From: Paramoeba atlantica
Taxonomy: Eukaryota; Protista; Discosea
Direction of reading: 5' to 3'
Assembly: GCA_977017575.1 (NCBI GenBank)
Contig: CDRNVI010000066.1
Location: 186,001-250,000 of the forward strand
DNA: 64,000 bases
Shown here piece by piece: positions 1-63,540 of this stretch. The notes beneath the pieces were generated by a model, which ran no database searches, was not told where the DNA came from, and saw nothing but the letters and a program-made list of their open reading frames with translations. Numbering within the stretch: the first letter of the stretch is position 1; the number at the start of each line of letters is the position of its first letter. The position numbers and the translations under genes were made by a program.

Positions 1-534
1 TGCCGACGGTCCGACCCTGTAAAAGAGCAGCTAGGTGAGCTGGAAGCGTGGGTAGGGGGCGATGGTATAATGGTGTGGATGGGGGTAAGCATAAAGCATG
101 GATTTCATCTGCACATTTTTCCTAATAGAGATGAGCAGGGAAATAGAGTTACTGTGAACGGGGCTGTTTTCGAAGCTGCCATGACCAAGCGTAATGGTCT
201 TTTGAACCTACACAGGCACCGTGCAGTTGTTGCTATGGACAATTGCCCTGCGCACAACTTGGCAAGGCGTACTTTTCAGCAGCAAAACGTGCGAACGCTC
301 CCCTGGCCCGCAAAGTCACCGGATCTCAACCCCATCGAAAACTTGTGGAATATCATGGATCAGCACAAGGATCGCATGCGACCACGCAATCGCGCAGATC
401 TCCTCTCTTCTATCGAGAGTGCATACGAGGCACTTCAAACCGATCTCAAAAGTACTTGCGTGAAGACCATAAAGAGTGTCTCCAAGCGCTTTCAAATCGT
501 TATTGAGAAAAAAGGGGGAAATTGTGGGTACTGA
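1..534 (+). CDS. Tc1/mariner (DDE_3-type) transposase, C-terminal part; 5' end lies outside the window
   Basis: Frame is open from base 1. Motifs GGDGIMVWMG, MDNCPAH and WPAKSPDLNPIENLW match Tc1-family catalytic motifs. 32 residues lie between the second Asp and the Glu. Confidence 0.92.
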   Translation, partial: CRRSDPVKEQLGELEAWVGGDGIMVWMGVSIKHGFHLHIFPNRDEQGNRVTVNGAVFEAAMTKRNGLLNLHRHRAVVAMDNCPAHNLARRTFQQQNVRTLPWPAKSPDLNPIENLWNIMDQHKDRMRPRNRADLLSSIESAYEALQTDLKSTCVKTIKSVSKRFQIVIEKKGGNCGY

Positions 535-753
535 GATTTTTTTTTGGAAAAAAAGGACTTTTTCGCTTAAAAAATAAAGTTGCAATTCGTGTTTGGGACC
601 ATTCTAGCTTTCTTTGATTCCCGTAAACTTTCGCAGAGTGCTTTTTACGATTACACCAGACTATTTGAGAGCTCTCGAATGCGCTATTACTTTCCAAAAT
701 TGAACAAGTTTTACGAATTTTAGACCCCCCCACTCTGAAGGTGCCCACCCATG
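1..753 (+). mobile_element. Right part of a Tc1-like DNA transposon; right TIR about 667-753, followed by TA (754-755)
   Basis: 667-753 (GAGAGCTCTCGAATGCG...CAAAATTGAACAAG...CCCACCCATG|TA) aligns with the right TIR of the element at 60330-61105 and ends at a TA. Confidence 0.75.
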
Positions 754-1018
754 TATGGGCCCTACTATTATTATAAACATTAGGACGTGGATGACCCACT
801 TCTACGCGGGCAACATATTCTAAAGTATATTTTACTATGTGATAAAGTCAGACAGGGAGAAGAACGTTTGCAGTTAACTAGGCAGCAAGATGATAATCAA
901 AAAGATTAATTATCATTGAAGCATATGTATATCTTTGTCTCGATAGTTTATGAAATGCTCCACCGCGCGAGTTAAGTTCTAGTACATTTTCGTCATTACA
1001 AAGCCGTAATCGATTCCT

Positions 1019-58149: not shown

Positions 58150-59316
58150 CTAAGTGGCAGTTTCATGTGGATCTAAAATTAGTTCCTTTTCTTTTGACAT
58201 CAAAAAGTATGAAACTAGTTTTTTGTAGCCCCAATACACAAGTGACATAGAAATTACAACCACTACAAACGTAGAACTAGTTTGTCGCGCACGGCATTTG
58301 GAACAATCGCATTCAAAATGCCAACGTTGTTTTAAATATTCTTGCTGGAGCGAAATAGGACGACTCGAGTCAGACAAATAAGTAACGAAGAGTTCCTCAC
58401 CCGCGTCGATCGGACGGAGAGTACGGGCAACAAGCCCAAAAGTAGCCCTCGGGCTTGCTACATCGAGCATTCCGGCCTCGATAGGGCATATGATTTCAAT
58501 GCCTACATTAGGCGAACAAGAATGATTGAATAGGGAGGCCTCCGGAAAAATTGCGCGACCGTTTCGTCCGGCATACAGCGTATCGAATCGGCAAAACTCG
58601 TACACAGACGCGATTCGTAGAACAACGTCCGTGGGATTTCCCTCTAAGCTCAAAAAGTTGTCCAATTTTGGAAACTCTTTCAGTATCTGCGAAGCTTCGT
58701 ATTGGGTAATTATCGGAACCCTCTCCTTTTGACATAGCAAGTTCAGTACGCCACGTATGTAATACCAAAAAACGAGAAAATTTGATGAGACGTTCGACTT
58801 GTTCGACTTTTCATCGCAACACTTGACATCTATTAGGTCGTTCAACACTTTGAGAGTATCGTGTACACAACGCATAACTTGATTGTGTAAAGAACTACCA
58901 TCACCTTGGCATGAAAATGCACAGAGTCGCATGATTTCTTTATCGTAAGCTAAATTGCGCATGGCGAATAGCCCCCTTCCTTTTCCAAATGAATTCCCTA
59001 CTTTAATATCCTTCGAAATGTAAGGTGTAAAACTGGACATGATTGCTTTGTTGCGCATGACAGTCTCAAAATTTGCGGGAAAACGCGGTGTGTGTCCCAT
59101 GTTTTTGGTGTCTTTGGATTCAATCAGGTGGCTCGTCGATAAAGCACCTTGACTAATAATTAGCTTATCCCCTAAACACCAGAAAAAAGGAGTTGTTATC
59201 TGTCTGAAAGAATTCAATCCTCCACAATGAATATTCCTCCTCTCTTGCAGCCTTGTCCTGGTGCAAAAATTAATAAACGTCGAAGGATTATACATCTTCA
59301 TTCTCCGGAAACCCAT
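58150..59316 (-). CDS. SMYD-like SET-domain methyltransferase with a C-terminal hydrophobic helix
   Basis: KGRGLFA, FNHSCSPN, GEELFVTYL, post-SET HFECDCSKC, then TFVVVVISMSLVYWGY. Start uncertain; the track start is TTG. Confidence 0.85.
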   Translation of the reverse strand: MGFRRMKMYNPSTFINFCTRTRLQERRNIHCGGLNSFRQITTPFFWCLGDKLIISQGALSTSHLIESKDTKNMGHTPRFPANFETVMRNKAIMSSFTPYISKDIKVGNSFGKGRGLFAMRNLAYDKEIMRLCAFSCQGDGSSLHNQVMRCVHDTLKVLNDLIDVKCCDEKSNKSNVSSNFLVFWYYIRGVLNLLCQKERVPIITQYEASQILKEFPKLDNFLSLEGNPTDVVLRIASVYEFCRFDTLYAGRNGRAIFPEASLFNHSCSPNVGIEIICPIEAGMLDVASPRATFGLVARTLRPIDAGEELFVTYLSDSSRPISLQQEYLKQRWHFECDCSKCRARQTSSTFVVVVISMSLVYWGYKKLVSYFLMSKEKELILDPHETAT

Positions 59317-59609
59317 TATTTCCTGACAATTCAAGCACAAAAACAAAAATCCAAAATACTACATATTGCAACAAAAATAGGTTAATTTTGAGTCTGAACT
59401 TGATCTAACTTGAACTTTGAAGCTAAGGTACCTACTTGATTCAATGTTTGATGAATCTTTAGATTGTTGAACGTGACAGCAAAATAAAAATTACCGTTCT
59501 AAAAAGTGAGAAATTTATAAAAAATCATACTGTTACCCCCCCTTTATAATTCCGCCGGTTTCGGTGCTTTTAGAAGTATAAACGTTGGAACCTGACCTTT
59601 GGAAGTATA

Positions 59610-59925: not shown

Positions 59926-60329
59926 AAGTAATTTCAGCGATTATTCTACGCGGAAGCCTCCGAGCTACTTTCCTACAAGACCACTGCCAATCGCTTGTCT
60001 GGAATCGTTAAAAGCACTAATGGCATTCACTAATGGTCTCTTCAAGTGGGGCGCGAGTCACAGCTTGCTGCGACTAACTTCGTCCGATTTATCGGGCTTT
60101 CCCACTTAGAGAGTCGAGGGGTCATAATTCTTCGGAGTCAAACGGCCAAGTCCAACAGCAGTCCAATAACAATGGCATTATACACACATACAATAACAAG
60201 GCTCTACACTTTTCACCGCTTACTTTTGCGTTTTCCTGCAACCGATCCTAGAGATGGTTCTAGAGATGGTCCTCAGCCTAGTAGTCTCCGACCATAAAAG
60301 GATGCGACTCTCAAGCTTCCTTTGATTTA

Positions 60330-61105
60330 CAGGGGGTGGCGAAAAAATATGGGGGGCGTCAAAATTCTTATAAATTGTCCAATTTTGGAAAGTAGCACCG
60401 CATTCGAGAGCTCTCGCAGAGATACCCACATGTACGTGTCACCTGATACTACGTTTCCCGTGTTTTAAATTTTTTTATTTCGGGACAAAAAAAATACGTT
60501 TTTGGAACTTGCAATTTTCTTCAGATTCTTCGATTTTTTCGATATTTTAGGTAGTTTCCTTCTATTTTTTTACCTTTCCGCTTCGTTATCCCACAGAAAC
60601 AGGATATTCCAATAGCACGGGTGTACAGCACCGTGATCGGAATTGTTACAGTACTCGAGGGCAGCTTAAAGTCACCCACCACATACTTTTAGTAAGGAAG
60701 TATGAAGAATATATTTGTGGGATAACTGATGCCCACAAAAGCTCATTATGCCCCACAAATCGGTCAGAGTTGCGATCGGCGATCGCATATGGGATTGAAT
60801 TGTTGAAAGGAGAACAGAAAAAATCATTTTTAGACACTTTAAGGACAGTTCCAACTCGTATTAAGATTACATTAACAAAAATATGGAGGATATTAAATGG
60901 ATATAAACGAGATATTTTTCAAATTTTAAAACTTGGAATTGGTGTTTTCAGCCCCTTTGGCATAGGGACCTACCCCCCTGGATACGGGAAACGCATTGTC
61001 AGGTGACACGTATCTCTGCGAGAGCTCTCGAATGCGTTGCTACTTTTCAAAATTGGACAAGTTATAAAAAATTTGACCCTCCCCATATTTTCGTGCCACC
61101 CCCTG
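60330..61105. mobile_element. Non-autonomous Tc1-like element, 776 bp, TIRs of about 110 bp, TA TSD
   Basis: 60330-60446 (CAGGGGGTGGC...GAGAGCTCTCGCAGAGATAC...GTGTCACCTGA) is the inverted counterpart of 60999-61105; TA on both sides. Confidence 0.9.
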
Positions 61106-62057
61106 TATATTGTGAGCTCCTGTGCGCTAGTGTCTGTATCACTAGGCGAGCCATCTAAATCCGGTACAATTTCGACCTTGCTCCAAATTTCCTCGAACAA
61201 ACATCTGTATGGCGATCACATCGCTATCCAGCGAAGCCCGGCGCGGATTGAATTCTCATCCCATGATCGAATAAAGAAAATTACATGCGGTGCCGAGAAG
61301 ATGAGCTCCTTAATACCAAGCGAAGTTTTTTTCTACTTTAAATGGGATACGAAAGAGGTGTTGTAAACCACGATATACATGTAGATACTATACCCCCCGT
61401 ACTTATTTGTCACCCCTTTTTGGAGAAAAGTGACAAATAAGTAGGGGGGTTGGGTATTTGACAAATAACTAGGGGGGTGGCGTTCGGTGTGTGACAAATA
61501 ACAAATAATAGGGGAGTAAGTGTCGTTGAGCGCGCCCAAAATAGAAACACTTTGCGACCTGGAAATCAGTACAGAAACGGCATCGGTGAAAGGGGACTTT
61601 TTTTCCCCCGAAAAAAACTTAAATTGTTTTCATGGCGGTTTTTCAAACAAGATTTCAGTATTATCCAAGCGAGTGATTAAACATCGTATTTTTGCTACTT
61701 ACACGACTCCGCCCTATCTTTTTTCTTTACACAGGCTGTAAAATGTATGACAGTATCACTTTTTGTAGTTGGGAACCTTGGATGAAGTGATGATAGAAGC
61801 CTGTACCGTACGATGTGAATTAAGGAGTTCTTGTAATCCGCTGTTTAAGGAATTTGAAATTATTGTCCAGGCTCAGAACCAGAACCAAGATAGAGCTCAT
61901 ACATTTTCTTGTTTGGTATATTTTATTAAGGGAAGTACGAAGTTAATTTTTTTGGGGGGAAAAAGAGTCCCTTTTGACCACGGTATCTTTTTCTCCATGT
62001 AAGTTCTTTTCTTGCCATAATAGATAAAGGCTCGCAACAGAAGCCTACATGTATAAT

Positions 62058-62149
62058 ATTGTTGTCAGACTCACATCAGGAGCCTATATTATTGTTGTCA
62101 GACTCACATCAGGAGCCTATATTATTGTTGTCAGACTCACATCAGGAGC
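62058..62149 (+). repeat. 33-bp tandem repeat, about 2.8 copies
   Basis: ATTGTTGTCAGACTCACATCAGGAGCCTATATT starting at 62058, 62091 and 62124. Confidence 0.95.
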
Positions 62150-62164
62150 GTACCTTATCAACTA

Positions 62165-62390
62165 ATGTGCCCCCCACTTATAGTACCGCGGTTTTCGACC
62201 GAACGGCACTGCTTTAATTCTAATTACCCTTAATTGAAGTTTCACCGGTAACCCGCCCACATTTTCCTGTGCCCCCCCACTTATAGTGCCGCGGTTTTCG
62301 ACCAAACGGCACTATACAGTGAGTGTTAAGCCCCACAGCGAGTGTAAGTGGGGGGGTACCCCGCGGCACTATAAGTGGGTGGGGGCACAG
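62165..62390. mobile_element. Nested MITE, 226 bp, TA TSD
   Basis: Left TA|ATGTGCCCCCCACTTATAGTACCGCGG; right (rc) TA|CTGTGCCCCCACCCACTTATAGTGCCGCGG. Internal direct copy of about 45 bp near 62270. Confidence 0.8.
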
Positions 62391-63540
62391 TAATATCAAA
62401 CTTTTTAGGGTGGACACTTTAATATCAAAATTGCCAGCTTAATATCAAACTTTGATTTTGATATTGGAGTGAACCGCGGTTTAAATAGGGTGTAATGGGA
62501 CAATAATTTTTTTGAACATAAATCGGGAAAAGAAAATCGGCGCCGCTGCGCGGCGCCTGTTTTGTCTGACTGACAATTGTGTAGGGTGGGGTGAATTCAC
62601 TATATTTTCCCACATGACAAATAAGTAGGGGGGTGGGAGGGTGACAATTATGTAGGGGGGGCATAGTAAGTCCACATTATTTGTAAGTAAGATAAAGGAT
62701 TCGTGCGCGAGTTGTACGATTCAATACTGTTCAATACTATTGTCGACGCAGTTCGTCAAATCAGGAGCACTCCACTGCTTACGGAGCGGGGAGAAAGGGA
62801 AGAGTATCGACCTCTGAGGGAAGATGTCCGACACAACAATATTGATCAATATTAATAAAAGGCAGGGTAGGGGAGGGCATCGAAGAACAGGTTAGGTAAG
62901 GACGTGCCAAGTAAGATCTAACCCAAAAGTTATAATTTTTTTGCAGCGTCTTCGCTCATCATAGAAAGTAGCTTGTGTCTAATTAGATTGTCTAATTAAA
63001 TTGAATGTCTAATTAATTTTTATTAAAGCATTTAAAGCATTTAAAAAACGAAAAAGACGTTTGAGCACATTTTTTAGTTAACAAAGGGGTTAGCCTTACT
63101 TTTTCATGAAGCTGAAAAACGAGGATAAGTCAGGGGAGAAAAAAGTCACCCCCTGACTAAACAACTTCAGAAAAACTCAAAAATATAGAGAAATAAAGCT
63201 GCTATTCAAATCTAGTTCGCGCACTGCACATTTATTGACTCGTATACAGTGTATGTAGGCTCGTAAATATAGTTTACTAGTCTGCCTGTCTTCAAATTTT
63301 TCGGGGCAGAATAAAAGCTCTATAAAATGCAGCACAATGGCTGCGTTTCAAAAAAAGTGCATTATTCCTCTTCATAAAAAATAACATCGAATTCTCATTC
63401 ATTTTTTAATAAATAACACACTATTCTGAGTAAGGTATTAATAGTGTTCAATTAAATCTTAGCTACAAAATAGATTATTGGTAGATTAAAAGGTTATTAT
63501 TGATTTCATGAATTTAGCAGCATGACACGCAAAACAACTT

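What the first reader, a model, noticed from the sequence alone, without database searches (positions are those of the whole stretch)
1..753. Tc1-like transposase with D32E spacing whose TIR matches a MITE 60 kb away
Seen: 32 residues between the second catalytic D (MDNCPAH) and E (NPIE), and the right end 667-753 is roughly 80% identical by eye over its first ~55 bp to the TIR at 61020-61105. Known: Tc1 is typically DD34E, and kinetoplastid genomes are considered nearly devoid of DNA transposons (Merlin in Bodo/Perkinsela is the exception I recall). Inference: an autonomous/non-autonomous Tc1 pair is, or was recently, active in a kinetoplastid-like genome, possibly after horizontal transfer.
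Basis: partly seen in the sequence, partly recalled or inferred. Interest (0 to 1): 0.78.

Follow-up and report, generated by a model that had tools for sequence, protein, structure and literature searches.

The report
Young Tc1-like transposon in a kinetoplastid
Window 1-753 is the end of a very recently inserted, internally deleted cut-and-paste (Tc1-like) jumping gene from a large, probably still active family in an early-branching kinetoplastid, a group in which the papers I could search report almost no DNA transposons.

Summary
The second catalytic D (238-240) and the E (337-339) are 32 residues apart. Window 667-732 matches 61020-61085 at 83.6% over 67 bp.

The pairing and transfer readings are not supported. 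Window 1-753 is the 3' part of a 1,250-bp copy (C66:185504-186753) of a ~1,558-bp Tc1-like element with 107-nt TIRs and a TA duplication. An in-frame deletion has removed its DNA-binding region, so it is non-autonomous. It differs from the majority of full-length copies at 1 of 1,249 bases. A 99%-identical sister locus on contig C44 has the site empty with a single TA.

At least 8 full-length copies keep an intact 370-aa ORF. The 32-residue spacing is shared by six in-genome subfamilies down to about 38% identity, so it is a lineage trait.

The 61-kb element (60330-61106) derives from a different subfamily with its own masters. The TIR match reflects a 65-bp inner block conserved in all subfamilies.

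The host is a kinetoplastid, sister to Perkinsela by RPA1. Recent horizontal transfer is not supported. The same spacing also occurs in pseudoscorpion elements, and a common origin is unresolved.

The scan had already noted this family on other DNA of this genome.

The parts
1..753 (+). 3' 753 bases of a 1,250-bp internally deleted (non-autonomous) copy of the subfamily A Tc1-like element. The whole copy is C66:185504-186753, which is window -496..753.
   Evidence: the copy matches full-length ~1,558-bp copies at 99% except for a 309-bp internal deletion; 1 substitution in 1,249 bases against the majority of full-length copies.
1..534 (+). C-terminal part of the transposase reading frame, equivalent to residues 193-370 of the intact 370-aa protein. 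The stop codon is at 532-534.
   Evidence: Pfam DDE_3, E 9e-10; tblastn 98% to the intact subfamily A protein.
238..240 (+). Codon of the second catalytic Asp (AMDNCPAH), D273 of the intact protein.
   Evidence: invariant in all five aligned subfamilies.
337..339 (+). Codon of the catalytic Glu (SPDLNPIENLW), E306 of the intact protein, 32 residues after the second Asp.
647..753 (+). Right terminal inverted repeat (~107 nt), ending ...GGTGCCCACCCATG. The family-wide conserved 65-bp inner block lies at about 660-725.
754..755 (.). TA target-site duplication. The partner TA lies just left of the element, upstream of the window.
   Evidence: TA|element|TA in nearly all copies; the empty sister site on C44 carries one TA.
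60330..61106 (+). 777-bp non-autonomous deletion derivative of subfamily I, flanked by TA at 60328-60329 and 61107-61108.
   Evidence: About 14 full-length relatives at 82-99%. Masters of ~1,579 bp at C87:321602-323185, C157 and C49 match at 86-91%.
60330..60461 (+). Left TIR of the 777-bp element.
   Evidence: (pairs I1 and I3; 89-90% complementary).
60984..61106 (-). Right TIR of the 777-bp element.
   Evidence: 94.6% to the subfamily I right TIR.
60590..60880 (+). Remnants of the subfamily I transposase frame: residues 2-41 at 75% and residues 310-367 at 81%. Residues 42-309 are deleted.
   Evidence: tblastn.

Best explanation
Window 1-753 is the right-hand part of a young, non-autonomous copy of a cut-and-paste DNA transposon of the IS630/Tc1/mariner kind.

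Shown: the full-length element is about 1,558 bp. It has 107-nt inverted ends beginning 5'-CAGGGGTGGG and inserts at TA, which it duplicates. It encodes one 370-aa transposase with two N-terminal helix-turn-helix units and an RNase-H-like catalytic domain with D177, D273 and E306 (D-95-D-32-E). The window copy carries an in-frame 309-bp deletion that removes residues ~18-120, which is most of the DNA-binding part. It keeps both ends intact. The same deletion form sits at three different TA sites.

Inferred: the deletion form was moved in trans by transposase from the at least 8 intact full-length copies. The insertion in this window is very recent, because a 99%-identical sister locus is still empty.

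Shown: the family is one of at least six subfamilies of a diversified lineage in this kinetoplastid genome, and all share the 32-residue spacing. They also share a 65-bp inner block of the inverted repeat that is far better conserved than the coding DNA. The 61-kb element is a 777-bp deletion derivative of a different subfamily.

Inferred: the shared block is probably the binding site for the conserved N-terminal domain.
For: Transposase identity:
- Pfam DDE_3 is above its cutoff, with weaker HTH_28, HTH_23 and HTH_Tnp_Tc3_2 matches.
- phmmer matches the Sleeping Beauty catalytic domain at E 5e-12 with a 2-residue gap.
- An AlphaFold model (pLDDT 80) matches full-length Mos1 and the Sleeping Beauty and SETMAR catalytic domains.

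Ends and target site:
- TA|CAGGGG...CCCATG|TA occurs in about 25 copies at unrelated sites.

Copy classes:
- 11-12 full-length copies, 8 of them with an intact 370-aa ORF.
- 3 copies of 1,250 bp.
- 6 copies of ~752 bp, plus 2 older ones.

Age:
- Full-length copies differ pairwise by 1.0% on average.
- The window copy differs from their majority at 1 of 1,249 bases.

Empty site:
- C44:198517-199220 and C44:197771-198518 match the left and right flanks at 99%. They abut with a 2-bp overlap, which is the single TA.

Lineage trait:
- Subfamilies A, B, I, K and L (42-58% identical, apart from the close K-L pair at 84%) and P0157 (100% encoded in this genome) all have 32 residues.

TIR block:
- It is 74-95% identical among subfamilies whose coding DNA is 50-59% identical, with third codon positions at 31-38%. 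The terminal ~25 bp are mostly 41-57% identical.

The 61-kb element:
-.

Host:
- The RPA1 gene in the same window is sister to Perkinsela inside kinetoplastids, with SH-aLRT 100.
- All 20 of the window's ORFs above 400 aa are on one strand.
Against: - No transposition or expression data exist here, so 'active now' is inferred from intact ORFs, sub-1% divergence and one empty site.
- The empty site could be a second haplotype or a recent segmental duplicate.
- The HTH Pfam matches fall below their curated cutoffs.
- Binding of the transposase to the conserved TIR block is an inference.
- The RPA1 tree is a quick tree with long branches and composition warnings.
Confidence: 0.9

Rival explanations
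1. One reading: the element at 1-753 is the autonomous partner of the short element at 61 kb, and the pair entered a kinetoplastid recently by horizontal transfer.
For: The two ends share 83.6% over 67 bp. Copies are very young. Outside this genome no protein exceeds about 32% identity, so there is no evidence of vertical relatives in other kinetoplastids.
Against: The copy at 1-753 lacks its DNA-binding region. The 61-kb element's TIRs match subfamily I masters at 91-95%, and it keeps subfamily I protein remnants at 75-81%. The shared stretch is conserved in every subfamily. At least six subfamilies down to about 38% identity, with more than 110 matches on dozens of contigs, point to long residence and in-genome diversification. 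No viral or metagenomic relatives were found.
Confidence: 0.05
2. The 32-residue spacing marks one ancient 'DD32E' family shared by kinetoplastids and arachnids, spread by old horizontal transfer, rather than two independent 2-residue losses.
For: Cordylochernes scorpioides gene models hold repeated D-88-D-32-E transposase units. An AU test does not reject a tree with all DD32E rows together (p 0.435, lnL difference 6.6).
Against: In the best 119-row tree the pseudoscorpion rows sit inside a group with DD34E rows (SH-aLRT 95). The kinetoplastid rows group with a DD33E row and a DD35E row. Identity between the two groups is only 25-26%, no higher than to DD34E relatives at 27%. The first-D to second-D spacing also differs (88 versus 95-98).
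Confidence: 0.2
3. The element is a contaminant or a chimeric assembly join, not part of the kinetoplastid nuclear genome.
For: None was found beyond the general risk in protist assemblies that include prey and bacteria.
Against: The copy lies 266 bp from a host ORF and on the same contig as kinetoplastid RPA1. Its two flanks are contiguous at a 99%-identical locus on another contig. Relatives lie on dozens of contigs. T-rich tracts followed by AG precede the start codon in all five subfamilies, as at kinetoplastid trans-splice sites.
Confidence: 0.01

Closest known systems
DD34E/Tc1 family of the Tc1/mariner superfamily (Tc1, Tc3, Sleeping Beauty)
   Same: It has one transposase ORF of similar size, a bipartite N-terminal HTH region and a DDE RNase-H-like domain. 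The DE...F, DNxPxH and SPDLNPIE...W motifs are present. It has TIRs starting with CAG and a TA target duplication with a palindromic ACATA|TA|TATGT-like preference. Its best solved-structure match by sequence is the Sleeping Beauty catalytic domain.
   Different: [quoted passage not shown] The two residues are missing right after DNxPxH. Identity to any DD34E protein is 27% or less. The TIRs are 107-135 nt with a long conserved inner block.
Other named Tc1-like families defined by spacing (DD35E/TR, DD36E/IC, DD37E/TRT, DD38E/IT), as listed in PMC8533490
   Same: It fits the same practice of defining a family by D-to-E spacing plus phylogeny. The nearest outside rows in my tree have 33 and 35 residues.
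   Different: No listed family has 32 residues. The term 'DD32E' occurs in no transposon paper of the searchable library. I had no curated reference sequences for these families, so placement relative to them is untested.
Merlin elements of Bodo saltans and Perkinsela (PMC8101967)
   Same: These are DNA transposons in non-trypanosomatid kinetoplastids. The paper calls them the first DNA transposon in the group.
   Different: Merlin belongs to a different superfamily (IS1595-like, different TSD). It is described as preserved yet inactive in Perkinsela (section heading seen). Here the family has many young copies with intact ORFs and an insertion that is absent from a sister locus.
Tc1-like D-88-D-32-E transposase units in the pseudoscorpion Cordylochernes scorpioides (UYV73704.1, UYV76639.1 and others)
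   Same: The D-to-E spacing is the same at 32 residues, with no gap in pairwise alignment across that interval.
   Different: Identity is only 25-26%. The first-D to second-D distance differs. The two groups fall in separate places in the best tree, although their union is not rejected.

Membership tests
IS630/Tc1/mariner (ITm) superfamily | DDE/D catalytic triad in an RNase-H-like fold | tested here: met
   D177, D273 and E306 are invariant in five subfamilies. Pfam DDE_3 is above its cutoff. The AF2 model matches Mos1, Sleeping Beauty and SETMAR.
IS630/Tc1/mariner (ITm) superfamily | TA target-site duplication | tested here: met
   TA lies on both sides of about 25 copies at unrelated sites. 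The empty sister site has a single TA, seen as a 2-bp overlap of the flank matches.
IS630/Tc1/mariner (ITm) superfamily | Terminal inverted repeats flanking a single transposase gene | tested here: met
   The TIRs are 106-127 nt at 92-97% complementarity in five subfamilies.
IS630/Tc1/mariner (ITm) superfamily | N-terminal paired-like bipartite helix-turn-helix DNA-binding domain | tested here: inconclusive
   HTH_28 (24.5 bits against a cutoff of 25) and HTH_Tnp_Tc3_2 (27.1 against 31.5) fall just below their cutoffs. The model shows two three-helix units at 28-68 and 85-132, and it aligns to full-length Mos1.
DD34E/Tc1 family in the strict sense | [quoted passage not shown] | tested here: not met
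   All in-genome subfamilies have 32 residues. There is a 2-residue gap against Sleeping Beauty.
DD34E/Tc1 family in the strict sense | Placement inside the Tc1 clade in a tree with curated ITm reference families | not testable with these tools
   No named reference set was available. In a tree of database hits the clade stands apart with DD33E and DD35E neighbours, at modest support of SH-aLRT 83-89.
MITE (the 61-kb element) | Short, with TIRs and a TSD, many copies and no coding capacity | tested here: inconclusive
   The element is 777 bp with TIRs of ~130 nt and a TA TSD, and has about 14 full-length relatives. It still carries recognisable transposase remnants. It is therefore better described as a deletion derivative.
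Autonomous/non-autonomous pair (1-753 with 60330-61106) | The non-autonomous element shares its ends with that particular autonomous element | tested here: not met
   Its TIRs are 61-64% identical to subfamily A over ~135 nt, against 85-91% in that alignment (91-95% by BLAST) to subfamily I masters.
Kinetoplastea (host) | Host marker genes branch within kinetoplastids, with single-strand intronless gene arrays | tested here: met
   RPA1's best named hit is Perkinsela at 47%. The tree places it sister to Perkinsela inside kinetoplastids with SH-aLRT 100. The window's large ORFs lie on one strand. An SL-like ATACAGTTTCTGTACTT occurs at 11 loci (weak, because the control count was 9).

The most novel reading that the evidence does not exclude
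The elements belong to a family-rank lineage of Tc1-like transposons defined by a D-32-E catalytic spacing. This lineage has long resided and diversified in prokinetoplastids and is transposing today. It does so in a genome type (polycistronic, trans-spliced) that was thought to carry essentially no DNA transposons. Its 65-bp inner TIR block, conserved far beyond the coding sequence, would be a shared cis-element that lets subfamilies mobilise each other's derivatives.
Probability: 0.4. Interest if true: 0.65.

Novelty: new variant of a known kind. Interest (0 to 1): 0.6.

Why it matters
Kinetoplastid genomes are a textbook case of genomes shaped by retroelements only. The one paper I found on DNA transposons in the group reports Merlin, in Bodo saltans and Perkinsela (PMC8101967).

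A large, diversified Tc1-like lineage with intact genes and an insertion still absent from a sister locus shows that cut-and-paste transposition can persist in a kinetoplastid. It also gives a natural, host-adapted transposon that could be tried as a genetic tool in these organisms.

It adds a 32-residue spacing class to a superfamily whose families are named by that spacing. It also offers a clean case for asking why part of an inverted repeat is conserved more strongly than the transposase itself.

Tried and rejected
I showed instead that they are encoded in this genome.
More divergent subfamilies and the C44 empty site could therefore be studied only through coordinates and database proteins.
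- Rfam found nothing in the window.
- The published prokinetoplastid SL motif gave only one-mismatch hits with a high control count, so it is weak support.
- Scans of viral contigs and JGI metagenomes with clade-specific peptide patterns found no relatives. These scans need exact patterns and are not sensitive.
- Private 6-bp deletion: rejected, because all subfamilies have 32 residues.
- Unique DD32E: rejected, because the pseudoscorpion also has it.
- Convergence versus common origin of the spacing stays open.
- Literature searches for 'DD32E' and for Tc1/mariner in kinetoplastids returned nothing relevant beyond PMC8101967.
- The species could not be named. The Tikhonenkov 2021 prokinetoplastid assemblies are far more fragmented than this one.

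Full report
**1. Observation**

Frame 1 of window 1-534 is the C-terminal part of a DDE transposase (Pfam DDE_3, E 9e-10).
- The second catalytic Asp (AMDNCPAH) is at 238-240 and the Glu (SPDLNPIENLW) at 337-339, so 32 residues lie between them.
- HMMER aligns the intact protein to the Sleeping Beauty catalytic domain (5cr4, E 5e-12). A 2-residue gap falls directly after DNxPxH.
- DD34E relatives from the databases show the same gap.
- The claimed TIR resemblance is real. Window 667-732 matches 61020-61085 at 83.6% over 67 bp (E 1.6e-12) and 60350-60415 at 86.6% (MAFFT view).

**2. The whole element**

The window is G000:C66:186001-250000.
- The copy runs from C66:185504 to 186753, which is window -496 to 753.
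- Full-length relatives are about 1,558 bp with 106-107-nt TIRs. They hold one ORF of 370 aa counted from the ATG.
- The window copy lacks 309 bp in frame. Its ORF reads MPQKRVRSRTSRFPFQR|GFQCSR.... This removes residues ~18-120, which are the first HTH, the linker and most of the second HTH. D177, D273 and E306 remain.
- The first D (WCDEKKF) lies about 55 bases upstream of the window start.

**3. Protein**

- Pfam gives DDE_3 above its cutoff. HTH_28, HTH_23 and HTH_Tnp_Tc3_2 fall just below their cutoffs.
- An AlphaFold2 model built on an 11-row alignment (pLDDT 80) shows two three-helix units followed by an alpha/beta catalytic domain.
- Foldseek matches full-length Mos1 transpososome chains (E ~3e-12), the Sleeping Beauty catalytic domain (TM 0.70 on the target) and SETMAR (TM 0.82).

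**4. Family structure and age**

In the fetched loci, subfamily A has these copy classes:
- 11-12 full-length copies, 8 of them with an intact 370-aa ORF.
- 3 copies of the 1,250-bp deletion form at unrelated sites (L001, L002, L003).
- 6 copies of a ~752-bp form.
- 2 older short copies.

Nearly every copy is flanked by TA on both sides. Many flanks have the palindromic ACATA/TATGT look of Tc1 targets.

Full-length copies differ pairwise by 1.0% on average. The window copy differs from their majority at 1 of 1,249 positions.

**5. Empty site**

I searched the genome with the copy plus its flanks.
- The left flank matches C44:198517-199220 and the right flank matches C44:197771-198518, both at 99% on the same strand.
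- The two matches overlap by exactly 2 bp. Each flank piece carries one copy of the duplicated TA, so this is the signature of an unoccupied site with a single TA.
- C44:~133.6-199.2 kb is collinear with the window region. The 61-kb element and its neighbours recur there at 99%.
- C44 is therefore either the other haplotype or a recent duplicate. The 1,250-bp copy entered C66 after the two diverged.
- This also rules out a false assembly join at the element.

**6. The spacing is a lineage trait**

- The genome holds more than 110 matches to these transposases, in subfamilies from 100% down to ~38% identity. Many have no internal stops.
- Representatives of subfamilies A, B (P0002), I, K (P0003) and L are 42-58% identical (K and L, 84%). 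All have D-95/96-D-32-E.
- P0157 is encoded at 100% in this genome and is far more divergent. It has D-98-D-32-E.
- The 'private 6-bp deletion' alternative is therefore refuted.

**7. The 61-kb element and the TIR match**

- The element spans 60330-61106 (777 bp). It has TA on both sides and ~130-nt TIRs at 89-90% complementarity.
- It keeps remnants of the subfamily I transposase: residues 2-41 at 75% and residues 310-367 at 81%.
- Its ends match subfamily I masters of ~1,579 bp (C87:321602-323185, C157, C49) at 91-95%. They match subfamily A at 61-64% overall.
- About 14 full-length relatives occur at 82-99%.
The 65-bp inner block is GGGGGGGTCTAAAATTCGTAAAA..TTG.CCAATTTTGGAAA.TAATAGCGCATTCGAGAGCTCTC.
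- That block is 74-95% identical between subfamilies whose coding DNA is 50-59% identical, with third codon positions at 31-38%.
- The terminal ~25 bp after CAGGGG are mostly 41-57% identical.
- The A-to-I match is among the weaker ones. Subfamily A matches subfamily B at 92-95% in the block.
- I infer that the block is the binding site of the conserved N-terminal domain and that the variable terminal part may give subfamily specificity. This was not tested.

**8. Host**

- All 20 of the window's ORFs above 400 aa lie on the minus strand. They include RPA1, ERCC4, an EF-G-like GTPase, malic enzyme and amino-acid transporters.
- The RPA1 segment's best named hit is Perkinsela sp. at 47%, followed by Bodo, Trypanosoma and Neobodo.
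- A quick ML tree places it sister to Perkinsela inside kinetoplastids, with SH-aLRT 100 for both nodes. There are long-branch and composition warnings.
- An SL-like ATACAGTTTCTGTACTT occurs at 11 dispersed loci. This is weak, because the control count was 9.
- T-rich tracts followed by AG precede the transposase ATG in all five subfamilies, as expected for trans-splice acceptors. That reading is an inference.

**9. Relatives elsewhere**

- The word-indexed search found nothing above 27% identity outside this genome.
- The exhaustive profile search found 20,971 hits. Only 44 reach E 1e-30 or better, and the top hits are this genome's own subfamilies.
- The nearest outsider is P0170. It is an unnamed NCBI protein on a 1.5-kb contig, with D-33-E spacing. 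It is 27% identical over the full length and at most 32% identical to anything in this genome.
- Among the 150 best hits the spacing is 34 in 94, 32 in 26 and 35 in 9.
- The non-kinetoplastid 32-residue hits that I looked up (P0160, P0174, P0176, P0178, P0186) are gene models of the pseudoscorpion Cordylochernes scorpioides. They string together D-88-D-32-E units and are 25-26% identical to subfamily A.
- In a 119-row tree of the catalytic domain, with the insert columns excluded, the kinetoplastid rows plus P0157 group together (SH-aLRT 88). The next rows out are P0170 (89) and a DD35E row (83).
- In the same tree the pseudoscorpion rows sit within a group with DD34E rows (SH-aLRT 95).
- An AU test does not reject uniting all DD32E rows (p 0.435). 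Independent loss versus common origin remains open.
- Scans of viral contigs and JGI metagenomes found nothing.

**10. Literature**

- PMC8533490 lists the classical ITm families (DD34E, DD35E, DD36E, DD37E, DD38E, DD34D, DD37D, DD39D, DD41D), and none has 32 residues.
- 'DD32E' occurs in no transposon paper of the library.
- PMC8101967 calls Merlin in Bodo and Perkinsela the first DNA transposon in kinetoplastids. It states that only retrotransposons were reported before.
- No paper combining kinetoplastids with Tc1/mariner elements turned up.
- The prokinetoplastid genome paper PMC7859406 does not mention transposons.

**11. Earlier notes of this scan**

Several notes on other pieces of this genome describe the same family, including intact copies and the 32 spacing. 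One note covers this same stretch read from the neighbouring window. I re-tested their main claims here. They do not count as independent support.

**12. Verdict**

This is a real, young, non-autonomous copy of a Tc1-like transposon from a diversified and probably active lineage with D-32-E spacing in an early-branching kinetoplastid. The specific pairing with the 61-kb element and the recent-transfer idea are not supported.

Noticed in passing
window 61583-61980: A ~395-bp short element with 33-nt inverted ends (GGTGAAAGGGGACTTTTTTTCCCCCGAAAAAAA...). It has more than 25 genomic copies at 82-94%. It looks like a separate MITE family, and I did not classify it.
   Followed up: partly
window 61386-62668: A ~1.28-kb repeat bounded by 30-nt inverted ends (TACTATACCCCCCGTACTTATTTGTCACCC), with several GTGACAAATAAGTAGGGGGG motifs. 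The 395-bp element is nested in it. Partial copies occur on C40, C51 and C60. The stretch 60.3-62.7 kb is a cluster of mobile elements.
   Followed up: partly
window 62048-62150: Three tandem copies of a ~34-bp unit (tattgttgtcagactcacatcaggagcctata), seen when reading the sequence.
   Followed up: no
G000:C44:133613-199220 versus window: A ~64-kb block on contig C44 is collinear with the window in inverted orientation and 99% identical. It shares the 61-kb element but lacks the copy at 1-753. It is either a haplotig or a recent segmental duplication.
   Followed up: partly
L004:2299-3245 (C44:554659-555605): A 947-bp deletion derivative of yet another subfamily lies 40 bp from a full-length subfamily A copy. 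Its TIRs are 98% complementary and it has a 134-aa HTH-only ORF.
   Followed up: partly
G000, 11 dispersed loci (e.g. C3:645507, C10:202831, C51:68764): Identical ATACAGTTTCTGTACTT, one mismatch from the published prokinetoplastid spliced-leader motif, is scattered over many contigs rather than in one array.
   Followed up: no
protein P0169 (database hit): This relative is 31% identical to subfamily A. It has only 29 residues after the second D and Ala in place of the catalytic Glu (NPVATAW). It may be the 'DD29E' group that another reader noted in this genome. Its origin was not established.
   Followed up: partly
proteins P0160, P0174, P0176, P0178, P0186 (Cordylochernes scorpioides): These pseudoscorpion gene models of 740-1,363 aa are made of two or three near-identical Tc1-like transposase units with D-32-E spacing. 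They are probably read-through annotations of clustered transposon copies.
   Followed up: partly
window 58653-58674: A 22-bp match (95-100%) to the conserved inner TIR block lies inside or beside the ORF at 58150-59346. It could be a remnant or chance.
   Followed up: no
L004:860-924 and the equivalent positions in L031, L067, L041 and L045: All five subfamilies have T-rich tracts followed by AG within ~50 bases upstream of the transposase ATG. This looks like a trans-splice acceptor region.
   Followed up: partly
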